NCBI GenBank assembly: GCA_950097015.1
Contig: CATNEN010000037.1
Span: 3,224,001 to 3,288,000, forward strand
Direction: 5' to 3'
From: Macrostomum hystrix
Lineage: Eukaryota > Animalia > Platyhelminthes
Length of the DNA: 64,000 nt
Shown: positions 46,965 through 59,825 of the stretch, piece after piece
Layout: the number at the start of each line of letters is the position of its first letter
How positions within the stretch are numbered: the first letter of the stretch is position 1
Position numbers and translations under genes: made by a program
Notes under the pieces: model-generated
What the model saw: only the letters and a program-made list of their open reading frames with translations
What the model was told of the DNA's origin: nothing
Databases searched by the model: none

Positions 46965-49900
46965 ATCAAACCATCTAGTCATTCTCTCGTCAGAACATCT
47001 TGACACTCTAACATCAAACCATCTAGTCACTCTAACATCAAACCATCTAGTCACTCTAACATCAAACCATCTAGTCACTCTTACATCAAACCATCTAGTC
47101 ACTCTAACATCAAACCATCTAGTCACTCTAACATCAAACCATCTAGTCACTCTAACATCAAACCATCTAGTCACTCTAACATCAAACCATCTAGTCACTC
47201 TAACATCAAAACATCTAGTCACTCTAACATCAAACCATCCAGTCACTCTAACATCAAAACATCTAGTCACTCTAACATCAAACCATCTAGTCACTCTAAC
47301 ATCAAACCATCTAGTCACTCTAACATCAAACCATCTAGTCACTCTAACATCAAACCATCTAGTCACTCTAGCATCAAACCATCTAGTCACTCTAGCATCA
47401 AACCATCTAGTCACTCTAACATCAAACCATCTAGTTACTCTAACATCAAACCATCCAGTCACTCTAACATCAAACCATCTAGTCACTCTAACATCAAACC
47501 ATCTAGTCACTCTAACATCAAACCATCTAGTTACTCTAACATCAAAACATCTAGTCACTCTAACATCAAACCATCCAGTCACTCTTACATCAAACCATCT
47601 AGTCACTCTAACATCAAACCATCTAGTCACTCTAACATCAAACCATCTAGTCACTCTAACATCAAAACATCTAGTCACTCTAACATCAAACCATCCAGTC
47701 ACTCTTACATCAAACCATCTAGTCACTCTAACATCAAACCATCCAGTCACTCTAACATCAAACCATCTAGTCACTCTAACATCAAACCATCTAGTCACTC
47801 TAACATCAAAACCATCTAGTCACTCTAACATCAAAACATCTAGTCACTCTAACATCAAACCATCTAGTCACTCTAACATCAAACCATCTAGTCACTCTAG
47901 CATCAAACCATCTAGTCACTCTAGCATCAAACCATCTAGTCACTCTAACATCAAACCATCTAGTTACTCTAACATCAAACCATCCAGTCACTCTAACATC
48001 AAACCATCTAGTCACTCTAACATCAAAACATCTAGTCACTCTAACATCAAACCATCCAGTCACTCTTACATCAAACCATCTAGTCACTCTTACATCAAAC
48101 CATCTAGTCACTCTAGCATCAAACCATCTAGTCACTCTAGCATCAAACCATCTAGTCACTCTAACATCAAACCATCTAGTTACTCTAACATCAAACCATC
48201 CAGTCACTCTAACATCAAACCATCTAGTCACTCTAACATCAACCATCTAGTCACTCTAACATCAAAACCATCTAGTTACTCTAACATCAAAACATCTAGT
48301 CACTCTAACATCAAACCATCCAGTCACTCTAACATCAAACCATCTAGTCACTCTAACATCAAACCATCTAGTCACTCTAACATCAAACCATCTAGTCACT
48401 CTAACATCAAAACATCTAGTCACTCTAACATCAAACCATCCAGTCACTCTTACATCAACCATCTAGTCACTCTAACATCAAACCATCTAGTCACTCTAAC
48501 ATCAAACCATCTAGTCACTCTAACATCAAACCATCTAGTCACTCTAACATCAAACCATCTAGTCACTCTAACATCAAAACATCTAGTCACTCTAACATCA
48601 AACCATCCAGTCACTCTAACATCAAAACATCTAGTCACTCTAACATCAAACCATCTAGTCACTCTAACATCAAACCATCTAGTCACTCTAACATCAAACC
48701 ATCTAGTCACTCTAACATCAAACCATCTAGTCACTCTAGCATCAAACCATCTAGTCACTCTAGCATCAAACCATCTAGTCACTCTAACATCAAACCATCT
48801 AGTTACTCTAACATCAAACCATCCAGTCACTCTAACATCAAACCATCTAGTCACTCTAACATCAAACCATCTAGTCACTCTAACATCAAAACATCTAGTC
48901 ACTCTAACATCAAACCATCTAGTCACTCTAACATCAAACCATCTAGTCACTCTAGCATCAAACCATCTAGTCACTCTAGCATCAAACCATCTAGTCACTC
49001 TAACATCAAACCATCTAGTTACCTAACATCAAACCATCCAGTCACTCTAACATCAAACCATCTAGTCACTCTAACATCAAACCATCTAGTCACTCTAACA
49101 TCAAACCATCCAGTCACTCTTACATCAAACCATCTAGTCACTCTTACATCAAACCATCTAGTCACTCTAGCATCAAACCATCTAGTCACTCTAGCATCAA
49201 ACCATCTAGTCACTCTAACATCAAACCATCTAGTTACTCTAACATCAAACCATCCAGTCACTCTAACATCAAACCATCCAGTCACTCTTACATCAAACCA
49301 TCTAGTCACTCTAACATCAAACCATCTAGTCACTCTAACATCAAACCATCTAGTCACTCTAACATCAAACCATCTAGTCACTCTAACATCAAACCATCTA
49401 GTCACTCTAACATCAAACCATCTAGTCACTCTAACATCAAACCATCTAGTCACTCTAACATCAAAACATCTAGTCACTCTAACATCAAACCATCCAGTCA
49501 CTCTACATCAAACCATCTAGTCACTCTAACATCAAACCATCTAGTCACTCTAACATCAAACCATCCAGTCACTCTAACATCAAACCATCTAGTCACTCTA
49601 ACATCAAACCATCAGTCACTCTACATCAAACCATCTAGTCACTCTTACATCAAACCATCCAGTCACTCTTACATCAAACCATCTAGTCAAACTAACATCA
49701 AACCATCCACCGAGTCACTCTAACATCAAACCATCCAGTCACTCTAACATCAAAACATCTAGTCACTCTAACATCAAACCATCCAGTCACTCTAACATCA
49801 AACCATCTAGTCACTCTAACATCAAAACATCTAGTCACTCTAACATCAAACCATCCAGTCACTCTAACATCAAAACATCTAGTCACTCTAACATCAAACC

Positions 49901-50945
49901 ATCTAGTCACTCTAACATCAAACCATCTAGTCACTCTAACATCAAACCATCTAGTCACTCTAACATCAAACCATCTAGTCACTCTAGCATCAAACCATCT
50001 AGTCACTCTAGCATCAAACCATCTAGTCACTCTAACATCAAACCATCTAGTTACTCTAACATCAAACCATCCAGTCACTCTAACATCAAACCATCTAGTC
50101 ACTCTAACATCAAACCATCTAGTCACTCTAACATCAAAACATCTAGTCACTCTAACATCAAACCATCTAGTCACTCTAACATCAAACCATCTAGTCACTC
50201 TAGCATCAAACCATCTAGTCACTCTAGCATCAAACCATCTAGTCACTCTAACATCAAACCATCTAGTTACTCTAACATCAAACCATCCAGTCACTCTAAC
50301 ATCAAACCATCTAGTCACTCTAACATCAAACCATCTAGTCACTCTAACATCAAACCATCCAGTCACTCTTACATCAAACCATCTAGTCACTCTTACATCA
50401 AACCATCTAGTCACTCTAGCATCAAACCATCTAGTCACTCTAGCATCAAACCATCTAGTCACTCTAACATCAAACCATCTAGTTACTCTAACATCAAACC
50501 ATCCAGTCACTCTAACATCAAACCATCCAGTCACTCTTACATCAAACCATCTAGTCACTCTAACATCAAACCATCTAGTCACTCTAACATCAAACCATCT
50601 AGTCACTCTAACATCAAACCATCTAGTCACTCTAACATCAAACCATCTAGTCACTCTAACATCAAACCATCTAGTCACTCTAACATCAAACCATCTAGTC
50701 ACTCTAACATCAAACCATCTAGTCACTCTAACATCAAACCATCTAGTCACTCTAACATCAAACCATCTAGTCACTCTTACATCAAACCATCCAGTCACTC
50801 TTACATCAAACCATCTAGTCACTCTTACATCAAACCATCCAGTCACTCTTACATCAAACCATCCAGTCACTCTTACATCAAACCATCCAGTCACTCTTAC
50901 ATCAAACCATCTAGTCAAACTAACATCAAACCATCCACCGAGTCA
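46965..50945. repeat. 24-bp minisatellite (CATCAAACCATCTAGTCACTCTAA)n, ~165 units
   Basis: Read directly; the minus-strand VRVTRWFD ORFs are simply its translation. Confidence 0.98.
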
Positions 50946-51170: not shown

Positions 51171-51344
51171 TGGCGCATTGTGCACTTCTGATGGGCGCAA
51201 TTTGCTAAATTAAAACTCGTAACTGCGAATTCTGCACCCCCCGGATATCCGAAGGGCATTTCAAAAACCCCGTAAACATATTTATGCTCGCGTTTGGATC
51301 AGTCAACAGCAGTGCCACTCTTCTTCAGCTAAGATTCTCCTGCG

Positions 51345-52335
51345 ATTCCAACTGTTGTTTCCTCCTACGATTCCAGCTGTTGTGTCCTCCTACGATTCCA
51401 GCTGTTGTGTCCTCCTTCGATTCCAGCTGTTGTGTCCTCCTTCGATTCCAGCTGTTGTGTCCTCCTTCGATTCCAGCTGTTGTGTCCTCCTTCGATTCCA
51501 GCAGTTGTGTCCTCCTACGATTCCAGCTGCTGTTTCCTCCTTCGATTCCAGCTGTTGTTTCCTCCTACGATTCCAGCTGTTGTTTCCTGCTACGATTCCA
51601 GCTGTTGTGTCCTCCTTCGATTCCAGCAGTTGTGTCCTCCTACGATTCCAGCTGTTGTTTCCTGCTACGATTCCAGCTGTTGTGTCCTCCTTCGATTCCA
51701 GCAGTTGTGTCCTCCTACGATTCCAGCTGTTATTTCCTCCTTCGATTCCAGCAGTTGTTTCCGCCTTCGATTCCAGCAGTTGTGTCCTCCTACGATTCCA
51801 GCTGCTGTTTCCTCCTTCGATTCCAGCTGTTGTTTCCTCCTTCGATTCCAGCTGTTGTGTCCTCCTACGATTCCAGCAGTTGTGTCCTCCTTCGATTCCA
51901 GCTGTTGTGTCCTCCTTCGATTCCAGCTGTTGTGTCCTCCTACGATTCCAGCTGTTATTTCCTCCTTCGATTCCAGCAGTTGTTTCCGCCTTCGATTCCA
52001 GCTGTTGTGTCCTCCTACGATTCCAGCTGCTGTGTCCTCCTACGATTCCAGCTGCTGTTTCCTCCTTCGATTCCAGCTGTTGTGTCCTCCTACGATTCCA
52101 GCAGTTGTGTCTTCCTACGATTCCAGCAGTTGCTTTCTCCTACGACTCCAGCAGTTGCTTCCTCCTTCGATTCCAGCTGTTGTGTCCTCCTTCGATTCCA
52201 GCTGTTGTGTCCTCCTACGATTCCAGCTGTTGTGTCCTCCTTCGATTCCAGCTGTTGTGTCCTCCTTCGATTCCAGCAGTTGTGTCTTCCTACGATTCCA
52301 GCAGTTGCTTCCTCCTACGATTCCAGTTGCTGTTT
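51345..52335. repeat. 25-bp minisatellite (CGATTCCAGCTGTTGTGTCCTCCT[T/A])n, ~39 units
   Basis: Read directly; all three plus frames are open, which explains ORFs 51284-52393. Confidence 0.96.
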
Positions 52336-52948
52336 CCTCTTAAAAGTCCAGCTTTGGTTCCTCAAGTCATCTAGCTTCTTTGATGGAGCTTAGATATTTT
52401 TCATCTAGGTTTATTCGTAACTTTATTATTCGCTCGGTATATCACAAAGGTGTATTCGACAAAGTGTGTTAAGGGCAAGGATTAATAAGGTCTAAATGCA
52501 ATCGATGAAGTTGTGTTAAAAGCAAGTTATCTCATCGCCTGATAGAATTCATTCAATTTTATTGGCGGCGGAATATATATTTAGTGAAACAACGGTATTT
52601 TTAAATAAACATATCACATATTTGCGTTTCTCATACTGCTATAGCGATTGGAAAATCGAAGGCAATTAAAAAACTCCATATTCAAACTTGCACCTCGATT
52701 AGAATGGTGAATAGAAGTGGCATGAAATAAACTAATTTTCTGGTCTATGTTCTTTTTAACAGAGTCTCGAAAACAGTTTTTCAGCAAATGGATGGTAAAT
52801 TTACGACACTATTGACTACGTTATCAACACATGTAAAAACTAATCAAACAAATTTTACTCGTAGAAGTACTTAAAATGGGGACTTAGTCGATTTAGTCCG
52901 AATTGGAATGTCGTATACAGTGTCTAGTTAATCCGTAAGGCTAGTGAA

Positions 52949-53666: not shown

Positions 53667-55454
53667 TCACATGAGTTCGCACTTTGGCCGCCTGTGGCGT
53701 CGCAGCTTGCGCGCCGGCTTGAGAAAGTACAACTTGCGCTTTGTGCACACAAGGATCTTGTCCTCACCCAGGGGCGCTATGCCGGTGATGTCCGCCAGCT
53801 CGTGCAGGAACTCCAGGCGCTGAACAAATATGAACTCGCTGCGCCGGATGATCCAGAAGACACGCTGACGCTGGTTGTCGGTGAAGATGATGCGCTTGTC
53901 GCTGGTGGTGATGATGTGCGCCGGCACCGAGTCAAAGATTTGTGTTGTCGTCAGCTTCCTGTAGACGCCGGTGCGGTCGTTCACGATGAGAATGTGGCCC
54001 TCGGCCGGGCAGGAGACCCACAGCATCCGGCGCTCGCGGGTCCAGGTCACGTGATGCGGGTGCAGATTCTCGAAGGTGAACCAGTGACCGGTGCGGCCCA
54101 GCGTGGGGCTGAGGAACTCCACCTTCTGATCCGCCGGCTGGGCCACCACCAGGTCGCCGCTGCGCTGGTCGACGTGAAATCCGGCGAACAGCGGCTCGTC
54201 TCCACCATCTGCGGCTCCGGGCCGCTCCAGGCGGCGCACCACCAAGCCGTCCAGTTGGACGCAGGCTATCGCCGACATCCACTGGGTGGCAGTGTCCGTC
54301 GGCACGAGGCCGCTGACGTAGACCAGTCCGTTGGAGAATGCCATGTGGTGGCAGCGCATGCGACGACCGCCAAGCACCACAGGGAAGTCCTTCAGCCTGC
54401 CGTCCTGGCTGGAGTACAGCAGCAGCGAGCGGCTGCAGGAATTCAGCAGAATCATGTCCACCTGGTCCTCGGGATCGGCGATGAGGCCGGCGGCGCCAAT
54501 CTCGAGGCCGCTGCCCGGATGCTGGGCGTCAAGGAAGCTGGTCTCGATCTCCTTCAGCTTGTAGCTGCTGTGCCGGCGCATGTTGTGCCGGATGAAGCTC
54601 AGGTCGAGGGCGTCCTCCTCTTCGGCCTCTGAGGATGAAGCGTCCGAGTTGGCGTCCTCGTTCAGATACCGCGACGGCAGTGCCGGCGGCTGCTGCTGCT
54701 GCTGCTGATTCGTTGCGGCTGGCGGAGGCGGAGGAGGCGGCGGGAGCGGCGTCGCCGCGTGTCGATGATCGCGTCCTCGGCGATTTGGCTGCGACGGATC
54801 GCCCAATCGGCGTCGAGAAGCTCCGTCCTCGTCATCGAGACGGCTAATGAGCTTGCTGAGATTCTCGCGCACTGCCAGCAGCTCGGCCCTGTCGAAGGCG
54901 TCCCGTTCCAGCTCTGACCGCATGACGAAGTCCTTGGCCAGGTGGGCCAGAATCTCCTGCTTCCTCTCGATGCTCCTCCGGCGCACTGAGATGCGGCTGG
55001 TGGCCGGGCTGCCACCGCTGGCGGACCTGGCGGTGGCCGAAGGAATCTGCAGGCGCCGGCAGTGCCTCTCGGCGATGTAGTCGACGATGGATTGATGCGC
55101 GGCCGCTGTTGGCAGAGCTCGAACCCCGTTTGGCGGCAGGCGCACAGAGACGCGGCACAGCGGACACGCGAGCCGGCCGTGCGTGACATGCTGGAGCTGC
55201 TGCTGCTGATGATGCTGCTGCTGTTGCTGCTGCTGAGCCTCCCAGCGAGTTAGGCAAGCCAGGCAGAACACGTGCGAGCAGGGCAGCAGCCGCGGCTGCG
55301 ACAGTCGGCCCAGGTGAATCGCGCAGGTTGTGAGCTCCTCCAGCTGTTCAACGCTGCCAGTGGAGTTTTCGCTGGACGTGTCGCTGTGTTTGCAAGCCAC
55401 ATCGCCGCTGCCGCTATTGAAACTGTTGCCCGGAACGATGGAGCTGTCCTGCAT
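53667..55454 (-). CDS. Intronless RING-finger / coiled-coil / C-terminal beta-propeller (TRIM-NHL-like) protein, 595 aa, ending in a polybasic stretch plus CELM
   Basis: RING motif C-x2-H-x11-C-x-H-x2-C-x2-C...C-x2-C followed by the TRIM-like PxNGVxxLP segment. Helical region next, then a Pro/Gln/acidic linker, then beta-rich NHL-like blades (PHHVTW, PAHIITTSDKRIIFTDNQRQRV, ITGIAPLGEDKILV). GC-rich codon use; in-frame TAA 27 nt upstream of the ATG. Confidence 0.88.
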   Translation of the reverse strand: MQDSSIVPGNSFNSGSGDVACKHSDTSSENSTGSVEQLEELTTCAIHLGRLSQPRLLPCSHVFCLACLTRWEAQQQQQQQHHQQQQLQHVTHGRLACPLCRVSVRLPPNGVRALPTAAAHQSIVDYIAERHCRRLQIPSATARSASGGSPATSRISVRRRSIERKQEILAHLAKDFVMRSELERDAFDRAELLAVRENLSKLISRLDDEDGASRRRLGDPSQPNRRGRDHRHAATPLPPPPPPPPAATNQQQQQQPPALPSRYLNEDANSDASSSEAEEEDALDLSFIRHNMRRHSSYKLKEIETSFLDAQHPGSGLEIGAAGLIADPEDQVDMILLNSCSRSLLLYSSQDGRLKDFPVVLGGRRMRCHHMAFSNGLVYVSGLVPTDTATQWMSAIACVQLDGLVVRRLERPGAADGGDEPLFAGFHVDQRSGDLVVAQPADQKVEFLSPTLGRTGHWFTFENLHPHHVTWTRERRMLWVSCPAEGHILIVNDRTGVYRKLTTTQIFDSVPAHIITTSDKRIIFTDNQRQRVFWIIRRSEFIFVQRLEFLHELADITGIAPLGEDKILVCTKRKLYFLKPARKLRRHRRPKCELM

Positions 55455-57361
55455 AATTTCGTTAATTGTTGGGATGGCTTCTTATATGAGTGACTCGATC
55501 AACACCTTGATTTGCATCCTGAATTGACATCGCTGAATCCGTATTTTAAACAGTCCTGCCCCGCTACTCCCTCTATTTAAAAGAATTTCGAAAACGAATT
55601 CTCCCCCTGCTGATGAAAGGAGGGCGTCAGGGGCCCCACGTAGGGCTTGAGCATAATTAGTTTGCTATCTTTTAAGGCCTTCAAAGGCTCAGCAGAGCTA
55701 GCTTATGGACTTCTGTATCCGCAGTCGCCTGTATTTATCCTTCATAGAGACAAAATCCGCCCCTCCCTCTTTGACCGACGCATCCTCTCTTTTTGGGATT
55801 TAAAGGATGCTGAAAAAAATCGCTTCCCAAGACCTTGCCGCTGGCAGAGCGACTTCGGTACTGCCAAATAGGCAGTTTTTTAGTACATTAATTACTGAAC
55901 TAAACAGCGCGTATCCATTATCGAGTTGCCCTCAAAGGCCTGGTATAGAACGGCGCACTCAGCCGTGTGTGACAGCTAGAGCTGGGTGGCCCTAGCAACT
56001 CACACGTAATCTGGTCCACAGTGTAGCTAGCTATGGATTGTGTTTTTTGTATGGGTGATATTCTATTCCCATTTATGGTGCTGGAACAATGGATGCAGGC
56101 TTGAAATTCAATTCATAGCTTTTCTCTTTTAGCTGGGAAGGCTTACAATTCGTATGGCAATGCTCATAGCTCACCTTTGTGCTGCAGGGATTTTAGCGTA
56201 TTTTAAATTGAGACGGATGACTCACGAGAGTTTGAGAAACAAGAGAAGTGACTAAACAGACCAGAGTCAGCGGGACTGACAGCTCACTAACCACAGTAGT
56301 TCCAAGCAAGCTTAAGGCCATTCTTACCAGGTCCAGCGAGCCAGTCCTAACCTGTTGAAGTCGTTTCCGTCTTGAATTGGACACCGCAGCCGCAGTCGCC
56401 GATTCCATAGTCTTCCAGAGGCAGGGTTCAGTCGAGGCGATACGCAATTTCGTTCTTTTGCCTTCAAACGTCGCTCGACAATTTGCAAAATTCTTGCAGA
56501 AGCGGGCCGGTCAGCAAGGCTATTTTATTATCTGTTCCTGTCGCTTTTGAATTCGACAAAAAGGAGCGAGAAAGAGACACAGATAGTGAGAGAGGAAAGC
56601 AGCGAACAGAAACGCGAGGCAGATGGGCCATCGGATGCGCCAAAATGAGGATGCGGGAGGGGGTGTTCACAGGATCCCAATCCCTCTCGTTAAGTCTCGA
56701 GGAAAGGAAGGTCGGGTGGGACGGGGGAGAGGGAGGCGAGGGAGAGAGAGCGAGGGGGAGGAAGGGAGAGGAAAAGGACGGTGCCGCAGGCTTTTCCCTG
56801 AAAAATGCGCAAAGCACTTTTGGTTGGCTCGCCCATACATCCCCCTCACCCAGATACTAACAGGCTGTCATTTAGGGTTAACTACCCGTAGCGGCAGAAT
56901 CTCTCATTTTCAGTCGCCCATTCCTAATAGTGCACGAAGCTCTTTTGCTAACTACAAATTTAGATTTGACTTCATTTGACTCAGTGTTTCATATGAGCAA
57001 CATGTGGCCTTGTTAGGCAGTGTTCCGAATGCACTCAAGACAAGGCTAAAGAGTTTAGCCCTTATTAGAATAAGGGCTCAGGTGTGTCAGAGGGCGGTTG
57101 TTAAATTAATTAAATAAAGATTAGAAAAGTGAAGATCTTTGAAAGGATGAAACCTGTTGAAAGAGGGAGAATGAAGTTGAGGAATGAACTGAAACAAATG
57201 CGCGCGTACAGTTCAGAGGCGAGGGTGCACTATTGGTCGCCTGAATGTACACTAATGAAATAAAAGAAAGGTAACACAGGTGCGTGAGGCGCGGTAGGCG
57301 GACAACTGGCAAAGCTATGGGGATGAGTGTACCATTAGTTTTCTAGCTAATGCTGACGAGA

Positions 57362-58548
57362 GAGGGACTGACAGACCAGAGACACAGGGACTGACAGACC
57401 AGAGACACAGGGACTGACAGACCAGAGACAGAGGGACTGACACACCAGAGACACAGGGACTGACAGACCAGAGACACAGGGACTGACAGACCAGAGACAG
57501 AGGGACTGACAGACCAGAGACAGAGGGACTGACACACCAGAGACACAGGGCCTGACAGACCAGATACAGAGGGACTGACAAACCAGAGACACAGGGACTG
57601 ACAGACCAGAGACACAGGGACTGACAGACCAGAGACACAGGGACTGACAGACCAGAGACACAGGGACTGACAGACCAGAGACACAGGGACTGACAAACCA
57701 GAGACAGAGGGACTGACAGACCAGAGACACAGGGACTGACAAACCAGATACAGAGGGACTGACAGACCAGAGACAGAGTGACTGACAGACCAGAGACAGA
57801 GTGACTGACATACCATAGACAGAGGGACTGACAGACCAGAGACAGAGTGACTGACAGACCAGAGACAGAGGGACTGACAGACCAGAGACAGAGGGACTGA
57901 CAGACCAGAGACACAGGGACTGACAAACCAGATACAGAGGGACTGACAAACCAGAGACAGAGGGACTGACAAACCAGAGACAGAGGGACTGACAAACCAG
58001 ATACAGAGGGACTGACAGACCAGATACAGAGGGACTGACAGACCAGATACAGAGGGACTGACAGACCAGAGACAGAGTGACTGACAGACCAGAGACACAG
58101 GGACTGACAGACCAGAGACACAGGGACTGACAAACCAGAGACAGAGGGACTGACAGACCAGAGACACAGGGACTGACAAACCAGATACAGAGGGACTGAC
58201 AGACCAGAGACAGAGTGACTGACAGACCAGAGACACAGGGACTGACAAACCAGATACAGAGGGACTGACAGACCAGAGACAGAGGGACTGACAGACCAGA
58301 GACAGAGGGACTGACACACCAGAGACAGAGTGACTGACATACCAGAGACACAGGGACTGACAGACCAGAGACAGAGGGACTGACAGACCAGAGACAGAGG
58401 GACTGACAGACCAGAGACAGAAAGACTGACAGACCAGAGACAGAGGGACTGACAGACCAGAGACAGAGTGACTGACATACCAGAGACACAGGGACTGACA
58501 GACCAGAGACAGAGGGACTGACAGACCAGAGACAGAGGGACTGACAGA
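57362..58548. repeat. 23-bp minisatellite (GGGACTGACAGACCAGAGACA[G/C]A)n, ~51 units
   Basis: Read directly; explains minus-strand ORFs 57315-58636. Confidence 0.97.
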
Positions 58549-59089
58549 CGAAAGACAGTGGGACATAGTTTGTATAGGGGAGGGATAAGAGGAACGTTCC
58601 TCTGTGAGTAAACGGAATGTTGCAACATTTCTGCAACTAAGTTGCTCTCGAAGGCGGTTCTCGCGCTACAATCTGGAACTCTGTATTAATTTCTCACAGC
58701 CTCCGGGATGCAAAGTATTTTACGGTACATTTCGTGAAATGTAATTCTGGCGTCATTTTCTATGAGTCATGCAACTTTCGTCATCTTAATCACGATGGAT
58801 TCTGCAGCCGCATCTGCTTTCGGGTTGCACTTTAAGATAAGAAAATCTTCGGGTTACCGTTGCGGCAGTAAGCCGCCATTTATTTGCTAACTCTGCTTCT
58901 ATGCTGAGGAAGTAAGGAGAGCCGAATGAACTTCCTTCAGGGAGTTATTGCCGCAGGGCTGGTTGCTCCAGCTGCCCACTGGTACCAGTTGGGTTGTTTT
59001 TCGAAAAAAATTGTACTTTTAAGCGGCTTTGGTTACTGGAATCGTAGAAAAATTATCACCGATTAACTCGCAACTTGGAAGACTTAAAA

Positions 59090-59825
59090 TCGAAGAGGAC
59101 AGGGAATCGCAGTAGAAGGTTTGAAAACTTAGCAGCAGATTTAGAATCGCAGCATGAGACATGGAATCGCAGTAGGAGATTTAGAATCGTAGCAGAAGAC
59201 TCAGAATCACAGCAATTTACTAGGAATCGCAGAAGGACACTGGGAATCGCAGCAGGAGACTAAGAATCGCACTAGAAGATTTGGAATCGCAGCAGGGGAC
59301 TGGGAATAACAGCAGAAGACATGGAATCGCAGCAGAAGACTAGGAATAGCAGCTGGAAACTGGGAATCGCAGCAATTTACTAGTAATCGCAGCAGGACAC
59401 TAGAAATCGCAGCAGGAGACTAAGAATCACAGTAGGAGATTTGGAATCTCAGCAGGAGACTGGGAATAATAGCAGAAGAGATGGAATCGCAGCAGAAGAC
59501 TAAGAATCGCAGTAGGAGATTTGGAATCGCAGCAGGAGACTGGGAATAACAGCAGAAGACATGGAATCGCAGCAGAAGACTAGGAATAGCAGCTGGAAAC
59601 TGGGAATCGCAGCACGAGACCAAAGACCAAGGACTTGTTCTTGAACGAGACATGGAATCGCAGCAGGAGACTGGGAATAACAGCAGAAGACATGGAATCG
59701 CAGCAGAAGACTAGGAATAGCAGCTGGAAACTGGGAATCGCAGCACGAGACCAAAGACCAAGGACTTGTTCTTGAACGAGACATGGAATCGCAGCAGAAA
59801 ACATGGAATCGCAGCAGGAGACTTG
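59090..59825. repeat. Degenerate ~20-22-bp repeat with core GGAATCGCAGCAG(G/A)AGAC, with an internal 131-bp duplication
   Basis: Read directly; duplicated blocks end at 59653 and 59784. Confidence 0.88.

What the first reader, a model, noticed from the sequence alone, without database searches (positions are those of the whole stretch)
53667..53745. RING-propeller E3 ligase candidate with a K-Ras-like polybasic + CaaX membrane anchor
The C-terminus reads KRKLYFLKPARKLRRHRRPK-CELM* (seen). Cys at -4, aliphatic Leu at a2 and terminal Met fit a farnesyltransferase CaaX box. An upstream basic cluster is the established second membrane signal in K-Ras4B. TRIM-NHL-type proteins are generally cytosolic RNA or protein binders, and I know of no prenylated member. 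This may be an undescribed membrane-tethered ubiquitin ligase class (inference). Glu at a1 is not ideal for prenylation.
Basis: partly seen in the sequence, partly recalled or inferred. Interest (0 to 1): 0.7.

Follow-up and report, generated by a model that had tools for sequence, protein, structure and literature searches.

The report
Flatworm RING-NHL ligase with prenylation tail
A Macrostomum flatworm gene encodes a TRIM2/3-like RING ubiquitin ligase with a six-bladed NHL propeller whose last four residues form a lipid-attachment (CaaX) signal that is conserved across a flatworm-only family, so it is probably a lipid-anchored membrane ligase, a combination I could not find described.

Summary
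The minus-strand ORF 53667-55454 (595 aa) ends in a polybasic stretch followed by CELM and a stop codon.

The interpretation survived every test I could run:
- **Family:** it belongs to an uncharacterised, flatworm-only family (Macrostomum, monogeneans, cestodes, trematodes and unnamed flatworm-like sequences).
- **Cysteine:** a Cys aligns in 16 of 17 full-length members, and 14 of 20 tails are canonical C-x-[L/I/V/F]-[L/M/A/S]. The rest of the tail varies in sequence and length.
- **Exceptions:** all non-canonical tails fall in one fully supported parasite clade.
- **Selection:** purifying selection runs to the stop codon, and DNA similarity drops to random straight after it.
- **RING:** its profile is closest to the TRIM2/TRIM3 RINGs (E 3e-16).
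- **Propeller:** the C-terminal domain folds confidently (pLDDT 88.7) as a six-bladed NHL propeller (Z 22-23 to TRIM71, Brat, TRIM2/3). There is no B-box.
- **Enzyme specificity:** yeast whole-CXXX screens score CELM above the farnesylation cutoff, and it also fits the geranylgeranyltransferase consensus.
- **Second signal:** the strong polybasic stretch occurs only in the Macrostomum members that end in M or A.

Lipid attachment, membrane binding and ligase activity remain untested. I call it a new variant of a known kind.

The parts
53667..55454 (-). Main coding exon: 595-aa ORF including the stop codon. It runs from the RING to the CaaX without interruption.
   Evidence: ORF list. GC is 0.62-0.67 against about 0.45-0.50 in the flanks. 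It is 83% identical to M. lignano BOX15_Mlig004309 and 54% identical to Mlig023823. tblastn is colinear over the whole ORF.
55449..55451 (-). Possible 3' splice acceptor (cag) right after the first ATG. It sits at the same position as the exon-2 acceptor of the M. lignano gene model, so a short 5' exon may exist upstream and the true N-terminus is uncertain.
   Evidence: The M. lignano models have a 22-28-aa first exon plus one large exon. Sequence comparison: window ...atgcag|GACAGCTCC versus L001 ...cgcag|GAGAGCTCC.
55152..55325 (-). RING finger, residues 44-101: C-x2-H-x11-C-x-H-x2-C-x2-C-x29-C-x2-C-R. The second zinc ligand is His instead of Cys (Asp in some trematode and cestode members).
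   Evidence: Pfam zf-RING_UBOX, zf-C3HC4 and others hit at E about 1e-5. RING is hit in 13 of 17 family members. Invariant columns are C44, C59, H61, C64, C67, C97, C100 and R101. The profile matches the TRIM2 RING at E 3.2e-16 and TRIM3 at 1.3e-13.
54807..55151 (-). Post-RING segment shared with TRIM2/3 (P-x-x-G-x-x-x-L-P...), followed by conserved helical segments at about residues 117-134, 155-182 and 189-216. This may be a short coiled coil. There is no B-box.
   Evidence: The alignment to TRIM2 extends past the RING to profile position 86. The helices come from a low-confidence model only. Conserved motifs are seen in A4. No B-box or filamin hit at E<=1.
54609..54806 (-). Low-complexity linker, residues 217-282, with poly-Pro, poly-Gln and acidic runs. 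It is not conserved among paralogues.
   Evidence: Alignments A1 and A4; pLDDT is below 50.
53715..54566 (-). Six-bladed NHL-type beta-propeller, residues about 297-580, with 24 strands (6 x 4).
   Evidence: AlphaFold2 on a 20-sequence alignment gives pLDDT 88.7 and pTM 0.87. Foldseek hits Brat, Thin, TRIM71 and Mei-P26 NHL domains and Vgb lyase at E about 1e-11 to 1e-9. VIA-align gives Z 22-23.5 to PknD NHL, Pizza6, Lin41/TRIM71, Brat and TRIM2/3. ESM Atlas features give NHL clusters at 0.95, and the Atlas shape search agrees. The Pfam NHL model itself is not hit.
53682..53714 (-). Flexible polybasic linker after the last propeller strand, residues 581-591 (ARKLRRHRRPK). It is the core of a stretch with 11 K/R and no acidic residue in the 20 positions before the Cys. 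Candidate second membrane signal; it could also act as an NLS.
   Evidence: Charge table. The model is disordered from residue 587 onwards, with pLDDT below 50. The stretch is conserved in the two M. lignano relatives (+12 and +11) but not in other members.
53670..53681 (-). CaaX box CELM, residues 592-595. Cys592 is the predicted prenyl acceptor. The stop codon follows at 53667-53669.
   Evidence: Translation. Family conservation. Yeast CXXX screen scores. GGTase-I consensus Cxa[L/F/I/M/V].

Best explanation
The window holds a Macrostomum member of an old, flatworm-restricted family of RING ubiquitin ligases derived from, or closely resembling, TRIM-NHL proteins. The layout is a TRIM2/3-like RING, a helical linker without a B-box, a divergent six-bladed NHL propeller, and a short disordered tail ending in a CaaX box.

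Proposed mechanism (inferred): Cys592 is prenylated in the cytosol. Farnesyl is the likely lipid because X is Met, though the motif also fits the geranylgeranyltransferase-I consensus. The -ELM tripeptide is then probably removed and the new C-terminus methylated at the ER. The lipid, together with the adjacent +11 polybasic stretch, would hold the protein on the cytosolic face of acidic membranes, most plausibly the plasma membrane as with K-Ras4B. The last propeller strand ends only about 12 residues before the lipidated Cys. The substrate-binding NHL domain would therefore sit close to the bilayer, while the RING recruits an E2~ubiquitin to modify membrane-proximal targets.

Shown here: the ORF and its tail, selection on the tail, the family-wide CaaX, RING similarity to TRIM2/3, and the NHL fold.

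Inferred: lipid attachment, processing, membrane location, ligase activity and substrates.
For: - **Tail:** the sequence is confirmed.
- **Family:** a full HMM search of 1.84 billion representatives found only 15 proteins, and every named one is a flatworm.
- **Cys conservation:** the Cys column is nearly invariant in the 17-sequence alignment, while the 8-17-residue linker before it is variable.
- **Motif pattern:** 14 of 20 tails have Cys at exactly -4. Position a1 is free (E, D, L, V, R, N, S), a2 is only L, I, V or F, and X is only L, M, A or S. This matches prenyltransferase specificity: a1 is tolerant and a2/X are restrictive (PMC10320760; Cxa[L/F/I/M/V] for GGTase-I, PMC11304957).
- **Tree:** on a tree built without the tail, the CaaX state needs one change only. 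All non-canonical tails form one 100/100 clade.
- **Selection:** in the last 30 codons versus the M. lignano relative there are 13 synonymous and 4 replacement changes. The 3' flank identity of 0.60 equals the shuffled control (alignment).
- **Yeast data for CELM:** Ydj1 enrichment 2.25; context-averaged score 4.29 (cutoff 3; Ras2 CIIS scores 4.07); Ras-based score 12.84.
- **Flexible tail:** the tail is disordered in a confident model, as prenyltransferase substrates need.
- **Second signal tracks lipid type:** the three Macrostomum members with X = M/A carry +11 to +12 charge. Both CVVM members have an adjacent Cys, a candidate palmitoylation site. Most X = L members carry only +2 to +5.
- **RING:** all metal-ligand positions are present, plus the conserved Ile46, Pro98 and Arg101 after the last Cys. 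It is closest to the TRIM2/3 RINGs.
- **Propeller:** NHL fold with Z 22-23.5.
Against: - No experiment or read data show prenylation, membrane binding, expression or ligase activity.
- Glu at a1 was one of the two mildly negative a1 patterns in the Ras-based yeast data, and the enzyme data come from yeast, not flatworm.
- The polybasic stretch is limited to one genus, and one FTase-type member (CNLS) has no obvious second signal.
- The parasite clade keeps a Cys but not the CaaX spacing, so the family can evidently work without a canonical box, or those gene models are wrong.
- The RING has His or Asp at the second ligand position, and zinc binding there is assumed.
- Family sampling is small (about 16 clusters), and several members are unnamed contigs.
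Confidence: 0.7

Rival explanations
1. The basic tail is mainly a nuclear localisation signal or an RNA-binding extension of an NHL RNA-binding protein. The CaaX would then act as a switch that keeps a fraction of the protein out of the nucleus, rather than as a stable plasma-membrane anchor. This resembles plant ASG2, which is nuclear when unprenylated.
For: K/R-rich runs of the KRK...RKLRRHRRPK type also fit classical NLS patterns (my own knowledge). Several of the closest structural matches (Brat, Lin41/TRIM71, Mei-P26, NHL-2) are RNA-binding NHL domains. For ASG2, prenylation prevents nuclear localisation (PMC6866125). The polybasic stretch is not family-wide.
Against: The feature conserved across the family is the CaaX, not the basic run. 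Strong charge goes with farnesyl-type X residues, as expected for a membrane second signal. This reading still needs prenylation, so it overlaps the main explanation more than it replaces it.
Confidence: 0.12
2. The conserved C-terminal Cys serves another purpose, and the resemblance to CaaX is incidental. Options are S-palmitoylation alone, metal or redox chemistry, a C-terminal docking motif such as a PDZ ligand, or a degron.
For: The trematode and cestode clade keeps Cys residues near the end (for example ...CCSWPS...CTSIFSC) without the -4 spacing. This would suit palmitoylation or another Cys-dependent role. E/D-L-M fits a class III PDZ ligand (my own knowledge).
Against: Outside that one clade the distance from the Cys to the C-terminus is always exactly four residues, and a2 and X are restricted to prenyltransferase-compatible residues. 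The PDZ-critical -2 position varies freely (E, D, L, V, R, N, S). The tail is modelled as disordered and apart from the propeller, so a structural metal site is unlikely.
Confidence: 0.12
3. The ORF is a non-functional or unexpressed copy, a pseudogene or assembly paralogue lying between minisatellites, so its tail has no biological role.
For: No transcript evidence could be obtained. The gene sits between long minisatellite arrays. The exact protein is not in the public collection.
Against: The 595-codon frame is intact. In the last 100 codons versus the M. lignano relative there are 40 synonymous changes and only 5 replacements. GC content rises sharply over the coding region. All RING ligands and propeller core residues are kept.
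Confidence: 0.04

Closest known systems
TRIM-NHL proteins (TRIM2, TRIM3, TRIM71/Lin41, Brat, Mei-P26, Thin/TRIM32, NHL-2)
   Same: The N-terminal RING is most similar to the TRIM2/TRIM3 RINGs, including the segment just after the RING. The C-terminal domain is a six-bladed NHL propeller. A helical region lies between the two.
   Different: There is no B-box and no filamin domain. The NHL repeats are too divergent for the Pfam NHL model. The second RING ligand is His or Asp instead of Cys. The protein ends in a conserved CaaX box, which I found in no paper on TRIM proteins. Known membrane-bound TRIMs (TRIM13, TRIM59; from memory) use a transmembrane helix.
K-Ras4B hypervariable region (polybasic stretch + CVIM)
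   Same: A disordered C-terminal tail with a farnesyl-type CaaX ending in Met, directly preceded by a strongly basic run with no acidic residues.
   Different: The tail is attached to a ubiquitin ligase, not a GTPase. Position a1 is Glu rather than Val. The basic residues are mostly Arg. The basic run is conserved only within Macrostomum.
FBXL2 (the SCF substrate receptor with a geranylgeranylated CaaX and nearby palmitoylated Cys)
   Same: It is a ubiquitin-ligase component placed on membranes by a C-terminal CaaX plus a second signal, which gives compartment-specific substrate ubiquitylation (PMC9988375). Family members ending CCVVM or C-x-CNFL have the same arrangement of upstream Cys residues.
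   Different: FBXL2 is an F-box/LRR adaptor that needs SKP1-CUL1-RBX1 for catalysis. Here the RING and the substrate-binding propeller are in the same lipidated chain.
Arabidopsis ASG2 (farnesylated WD40 DDB1-binding protein) and prenylated MUB/UBL3 proteins
   Same: ASG2 is a beta-propeller protein of the ubiquitin system with a CaaX that controls its location (PMC6866125). MUBs are prenylated membrane anchors that act on E2 enzymes (PMC4996978).
   Different: ASG2 has a different propeller type (WD40) and no RING. MUBs are ubiquitin-fold proteins, not ligases. Neither is related in sequence to this family.
NHLRC1/malin (RING + six NHL repeats, no B-box)
   Same: The minimal architecture is the same: a RING followed by an NHL propeller, without a B-box (from memory).
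   Different: Malin has no CaaX and no long linker. No sequence relationship was tested here, and the nearest RINGs by profile were TRIM2/3, not malin.

Membership tests
TRIM-NHL (tripartite motif, class VII) | N-terminal RING finger of TRIM type | tested here: met
   Pfam RING models hit. The family RING profile matches TRIM2 at E 3.2e-16, TRIM56 at 7e-15 and TRIM3 at 1.3e-13. The second ligand is His or Asp rather than Cys.
TRIM-NHL (tripartite motif, class VII) | One or two B-box zinc fingers after the RING | tested here: not met
   The window protein has no zf-B_box hit at E<=1, and B-box is not among the families matched by two or more of the 17 members. Residues 102-300 contain a single Cys.
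TRIM-NHL (tripartite motif, class VII) | Coiled-coil dimerisation region | tested here: inconclusive
   Helices at 155-182 and 189-216 appear only in a model with pLDDT below 50. The segments are conserved in the family. No coiled-coil predictor was available.
TRIM-NHL (tripartite motif, class VII) | C-terminal six-bladed NHL-repeat propeller | tested here: met
   The fold is met: pLDDT 88.7 with 24 strands, and Z 22-23.5 to TRIM71, Brat, TRIM2/3 and PknD NHL domains. At sequence level the Pfam NHL model is not hit in any of the 17 members.
CaaX prenylation substrates (FTase / GGTase-I) | Cys exactly four residues from the C-terminus, non-polar a2, permissive X | tested here: met
   The tail is CELM. 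In PMC10320760 the Ydj1 score is 4.29 against a cutoff of 3, and the Ras-based score is 12.84. It fits Cxa[L/F/I/M/V] from PMC11304957. These are data for the yeast enzymes.
CaaX prenylation substrates (FTase / GGTase-I) | Motif conserved in homologues while surrounding residues drift | tested here: met
   Fourteen of 20 tails are canonical, and the Cys column is nearly invariant. One change of state is needed on a tree built without the tail.
CaaX prenylation substrates (FTase / GGTase-I) | Flexible, accessible linker before the Cys | tested here: met
   Model residues 305-313 (protein 587-595) have pLDDT below 50 next to a confident propeller.
CaaX prenylation substrates (FTase / GGTase-I) | Covalent isoprenoid on the Cys | not testable with these tools
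   This needs metabolic labelling, an in-vitro prenylation assay or mass spectrometry.
K-Ras4B-type polybasic second signal | Dense K/R run without acidic residues directly upstream of a farnesyl-type CaaX | tested here: met
   There are 11 K/R and no D/E in positions -24 to -5. The same holds in both M. lignano relatives (+12 and +11).
K-Ras4B-type polybasic second signal | Electrostatic targeting to the plasma membrane | not testable with these tools
   This needs localisation of a GFP-tail fusion and of charge-neutralising mutants.

The most novel reading that the evidence does not exclude
An ancient, flatworm-wide family of self-contained, directly prenylated RING-NHL ubiquitin ligases, in which lipid type and second signal have co-evolved. 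Farnesyl-type ends come with a polybasic run or an adjacent palmitoylatable Cys, and geranylgeranyl-type ends come with little else. The anchor holds an NHL propeller, a domain that in its relatives binds mRNA or proteins, within about a dozen residues of the membrane. That would be a way to do membrane-localised ubiquitination or mRNA control that has not been described for TRIM-NHL proteins. It would also be secondarily remodelled in parasitic trematodes and cestodes.
Probability: 0.5. Interest if true: 0.7.

Novelty: new variant of a known kind. Interest (0 to 1): 0.6.

Why it matters
TRIM-NHL proteins are central regulators of stem cells, neurons and the germline. They are treated as soluble cytoplasmic factors, and the membrane-bound TRIMs I know of use transmembrane helices. 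Among ubiquitin-system proteins, the known prenylated examples are adaptors (FBXL2, ASG2) or E2 regulators (MUBs), not a catalytic RING ligase.

A conserved CaaX on a complete RING-NHL ligase would add a new way of confining this ligase type to a membrane surface. It would also give a natural series of tails for studying how anchors evolve: farnesyl plus charge, farnesyl plus Cys, and geranylgeranyl.

The family is restricted to flatworms and includes schistosome relatives, liver flukes and tapeworms. Macrostomum is a stem-cell and regeneration model with RNAi and, as I recall, transgenesis, so the idea can be tested directly. The parasite-specific remodelling of the tail may also interest helminth biologists. 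All public members that carry a name are labelled only 'hypothetical', 'unnamed', 'uncharacterized' or with a generic RING/zinc-finger domain name.

Tried and rejected
- **Exact look-up:** the window protein is not in the public collection.
- **First structure model:** the full-length AlphaFold2 run with only 3 sequences failed (pLDDT 36). It became usable only after the HMM search supplied distant homologues.
- **Word-indexed searches:** The exhaustive HMM search was what opened up the family.
- **PDB sequence search:** searching with the propeller profile found nothing real.
- **Pfam NHL:** not hit in any member.
- **PDZ-ligand reading:** rejected, because the -2 residue is not conserved.
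- **Peroxisomal PTS1 reading:** rejected, because no tail resembles SKL.
- **Structural zinc or disulphide role for Cys592:** judged unlikely, because the tail is disordered and the Cys-to-end spacing is fixed.
- **Literature:** four full-text searches found no prenylated RING-NHL or TRIM protein. The library is incomplete, so this is weak negative evidence.
Full report
**1. Observation**

The minus strand of the window carries a 595-codon ORF at 53667-55454. Its last 25 residues read TKRKLYFLKPARKLRRHRRPKCELM, followed by a stop. Cys is at -4, Leu at a2 and Met at X. The 20 residues before the Cys contain 11 K/R and no acidic residue. The ORF is a GC-rich island (0.62-0.67) in a 0.45-0.50 background, and minisatellite arrays lie on both sides.

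**2. Organism and gene model**

The best matches are three groups of hypothetical proteins from Macrostomum lignano: Mlig004309 at 83% identity, Mlig023823 at 54%, and Mlig013350 further away.

The M. lignano gene models have a short first exon of 22-28 residues and one large exon that runs from before the RING to the stop. In the window, a 'cag' sits directly after the first ATG, at the position of the M. lignano exon-2 acceptor. The true N-terminus is therefore uncertain. The C-terminus lies inside the large exon.

**3. Is the tail really coding?**

I compared the window with its M. lignano relative codon by codon.
- In the last 30 codons, 13 are identical, 13 differ synonymously and 4 are replacements.
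- In the last 100 codons, the counts are 55, 40 and 5.
- The 300 nt after the stop are 60% identical, the same as shuffled sequence, against 84% for the last 300 coding bases (alignment).

Selection on the protein therefore runs to this stop codon and ends there. I could not get direct transcript evidence.

**4. The family and its tails**

A profile of the C-terminal domain was scored against all 1.84 billion representative proteins. It found only 15 hits.

Every hit that carries an organism name is a flatworm:
- Macrostomum
- monogeneans: Protopolystoma, Cichlidogyrus
- cestodes: Spirometra, Sparganum
- trematodes: Trichobilharzia, Heterobilharzia, Opisthorchis, Clonorchis

The rest are unnamed assemblies.

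Members share only 20-35% identity with the window protein. Even so, the Cys aligns in 16 of 17 full-length sequences and is flagged as nearly invariant.

| Tail group | Last residues | Source |
|---|---|---|
| Canonical, 14 of 20 (12 distinct endings) | CELM, CDLM, CLIA, CELL, CVVM, CRIL, CNLL, CNVL, CNLS, CNIL, CNFL, CSLL | |
| Non-canonical, 6 of 20 | five keep Cys but lose the spacing (CLNLCGKL in two, SCLK, CTSIFSC, CCSWPS); Cichlidogyrus ends KVSM with no Cys near the end (short 1,985-bp contig) | |

Within the canonical tails, a1 is unconstrained, a2 is only L, I, V or F, and X is only L, M, A or S. The 8-17 residues between the last propeller strand and the Cys vary in both length and sequence.

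A maximum-likelihood tree built without the last 12 residues needs a single change of state. All six non-canonical tails form one clade with 100/100 support (trematodes, cestodes and Cichlidogyrus). The canonical tails occupy every other deep branch. From my own knowledge, Macrostomorpha branch early among rhabditophoran flatworms. If so, the CaaX is most simply ancestral and was remodelled once in parasites, though some parasite gene models may have wrong ends.

**5. Domain identity**

*RING.* Pfam sees only a RING. The RING pattern is C-x2-H-x11-C-x-H-x2-C-x2-C-x(n)-C-x2-C-R. All ligand positions are invariant except the second, which is His, or Asp in some trematodes and cestodes. The family RING profile is closest to the solved TRIM2 RING (E 3.2e-16), then TRIM56 and TRIM3. 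The alignment runs on into the segment after the RING.

*Propeller.* The C-terminal domain did not fold with 3 sequences (pLDDT 36). With 20 family sequences it gave pLDDT 88.7 and pTM 0.87, with 24 strands (six blades of four) and a disordered last nine residues.
- Foldseek hits NHL domains of Brat, Thin, TRIM71/Lin41, Mei-P26 and NHL-2, plus Vgb lyase (E 1e-11 to 1e-9).
- VIA-align gives Z 22-23.5 to the PknD NHL domain, Pizza6, Lin41/TRIM71, Brat and TRIM2/3.
- Language-model features and the Atlas shape search agree.

*What is missing.* There is no B-box and no filamin domain. The protein is best called a TRIM-NHL-like RING-NHL ligase that fails strict TRIM membership.

**6. Would the enzymes accept CELM?**

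In the whole-CXXX yeast farnesyltransferase screen (PMC10320760), CELM has an enrichment factor of 2.25 and a context-averaged score of 4.29. The authors use a cutoff of 3, and Ras2's CIIS scores 4.07. CELM's Ras-based score is 12.84. CDLM scores 3.48 and 11.44.

The paper reports high tolerance at a1. Glu at a1 was one of only two mildly negative a1 patterns, and that was in the Ras data.

The companion study finds that yeast GGTase-I prefers Cxa[L/F/I/M/V] (PMC11304957). CELM and every X = L family member fit that consensus. These are yeast enzymes, so transfer to flatworm enzymes is an inference from the known conservation of prenyltransferase specificity.

**7. Second signals**

The strong basic run (+11 to +12) occurs only in the three Macrostomum members whose X is M or A, the farnesyl type. 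The other M-ending lineage (CVVM, two sequences) has a Cys directly before the box, as in palmitoylated Ras or FBXL2. Members ending in L (geranylgeranyl type) carry +2 to +5, or an extra Cys.

This is what the two-signal rule predicts (summarised in PMC9988375). The sample is small, however, and one farnesyl-type member (CNLS) has no obvious second signal.

**8. Mechanism proposed**

The steps below are inferred:
1. Cys592 is prenylated in the cytosol, most likely with farnesyl and possibly with geranylgeranyl.
2. The -ELM tripeptide is cleaved and the new C-terminus is methylated at the ER.
3. The lipid and the basic run hold the protein on acidic membranes, most plausibly the plasma membrane.
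4. The RING recruits an E2. From my own knowledge of RING-E2 contacts, the conserved Ile46, Pro98 and Arg101 sit where E2-contact and linchpin residues lie in active RINGs.
5. The NHL propeller, tethered about 12 residues from the lipid, selects membrane-proximal protein or RNA-protein targets.

**9. Comparison with what is known**

Prenylated components of the ubiquitin system exist:
- FBXL2, which is geranylgeranylated and palmitoylated
- plant ASG2, a farnesylated WD40 DDB1-binding protein
- MUB proteins

None of these is a RING ligase carrying its own substrate-binding propeller. Four full-text searches found no prenylated TRIM or RING-NHL protein, which is weak negative evidence. I therefore rate this a new variant of a known kind.

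**10. Rivals**

- **NLS or RNA-binding tail, with CaaX as a nuclear-exclusion switch.** Plausible, and it overlaps the main reading.
- **A non-prenyl role for the Cys.** Disfavoured by the fixed -4 spacing and the a2/X restriction.
- **Pseudogene.** Disfavoured by strong purifying selection.

**11. Limits**

- No lipid, localisation, activity or expression data are available.
- Family sampling is small.
- Several members are unnamed contigs.
- Parasite gene-model ends are unverified.
- The N-terminal half has no confident structural model.

Noticed in passing
window 55316-55318 (His47 codon) within the RING at 55152-55325: The second zinc-ligand position of the RING is His in the window protein and most of the family, and Asp in several trematode and cestode members (CPIDL). 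The usual Cys never occurs. All other ligand positions are invariant.
   Followed up: partly
window 47004-50935, 51337-52339, 57361-58564, 59131-59822: Long minisatellite arrays flank the gene. Their periods are 24 nt (164 copies), 25 nt (40 copies), 23 nt (52 copies) and 20/131 nt. They generate the long repetitive pseudo-ORFs seen in the ORF list.
   Followed up: partly
window 55449-55454: The first ATG of the ORF is followed by 'cag' at the same position as the exon-2 splice acceptor of the M. lignano relative. The gene may therefore have a short upstream exon and a different N-terminus.
   Followed up: partly
P0009, P0033, P0010, P0012, P0014, P0013 (trematode, cestode and Cichlidogyrus homologues): One fully supported parasite clade has replaced the canonical CaaX. 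Most of its members keep Cys but lose the -4 spacing (CLNLCGKL, SCLK, CTSIFSC, CCSWPS), and Cichlidogyrus (KVSM, from a short contig) has no Cys near the end. This is either a real change of anchoring, for example to palmitoylation, or mis-annotated last exons.
   Followed up: partly
L003:520-2082 (Logan contig SRR21676451_176113): The gene caller started this homologue inside the RING (448 aa). The contig actually holds an uninterrupted 520-aa ORF with a complete RING, the propeller and a CCVVM end. Like the Macrostomum genes, it is intronless over this span, or it is a transcript.
   Followed up: partly
Tails of all family members: The basic charge of the tail tracks the predicted lipid type. 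M/A-ending members have +11 to +12 or an adjacent Cys, and L-ending members have +2 to +5. One exception ends in CNLS.
   Followed up: partly
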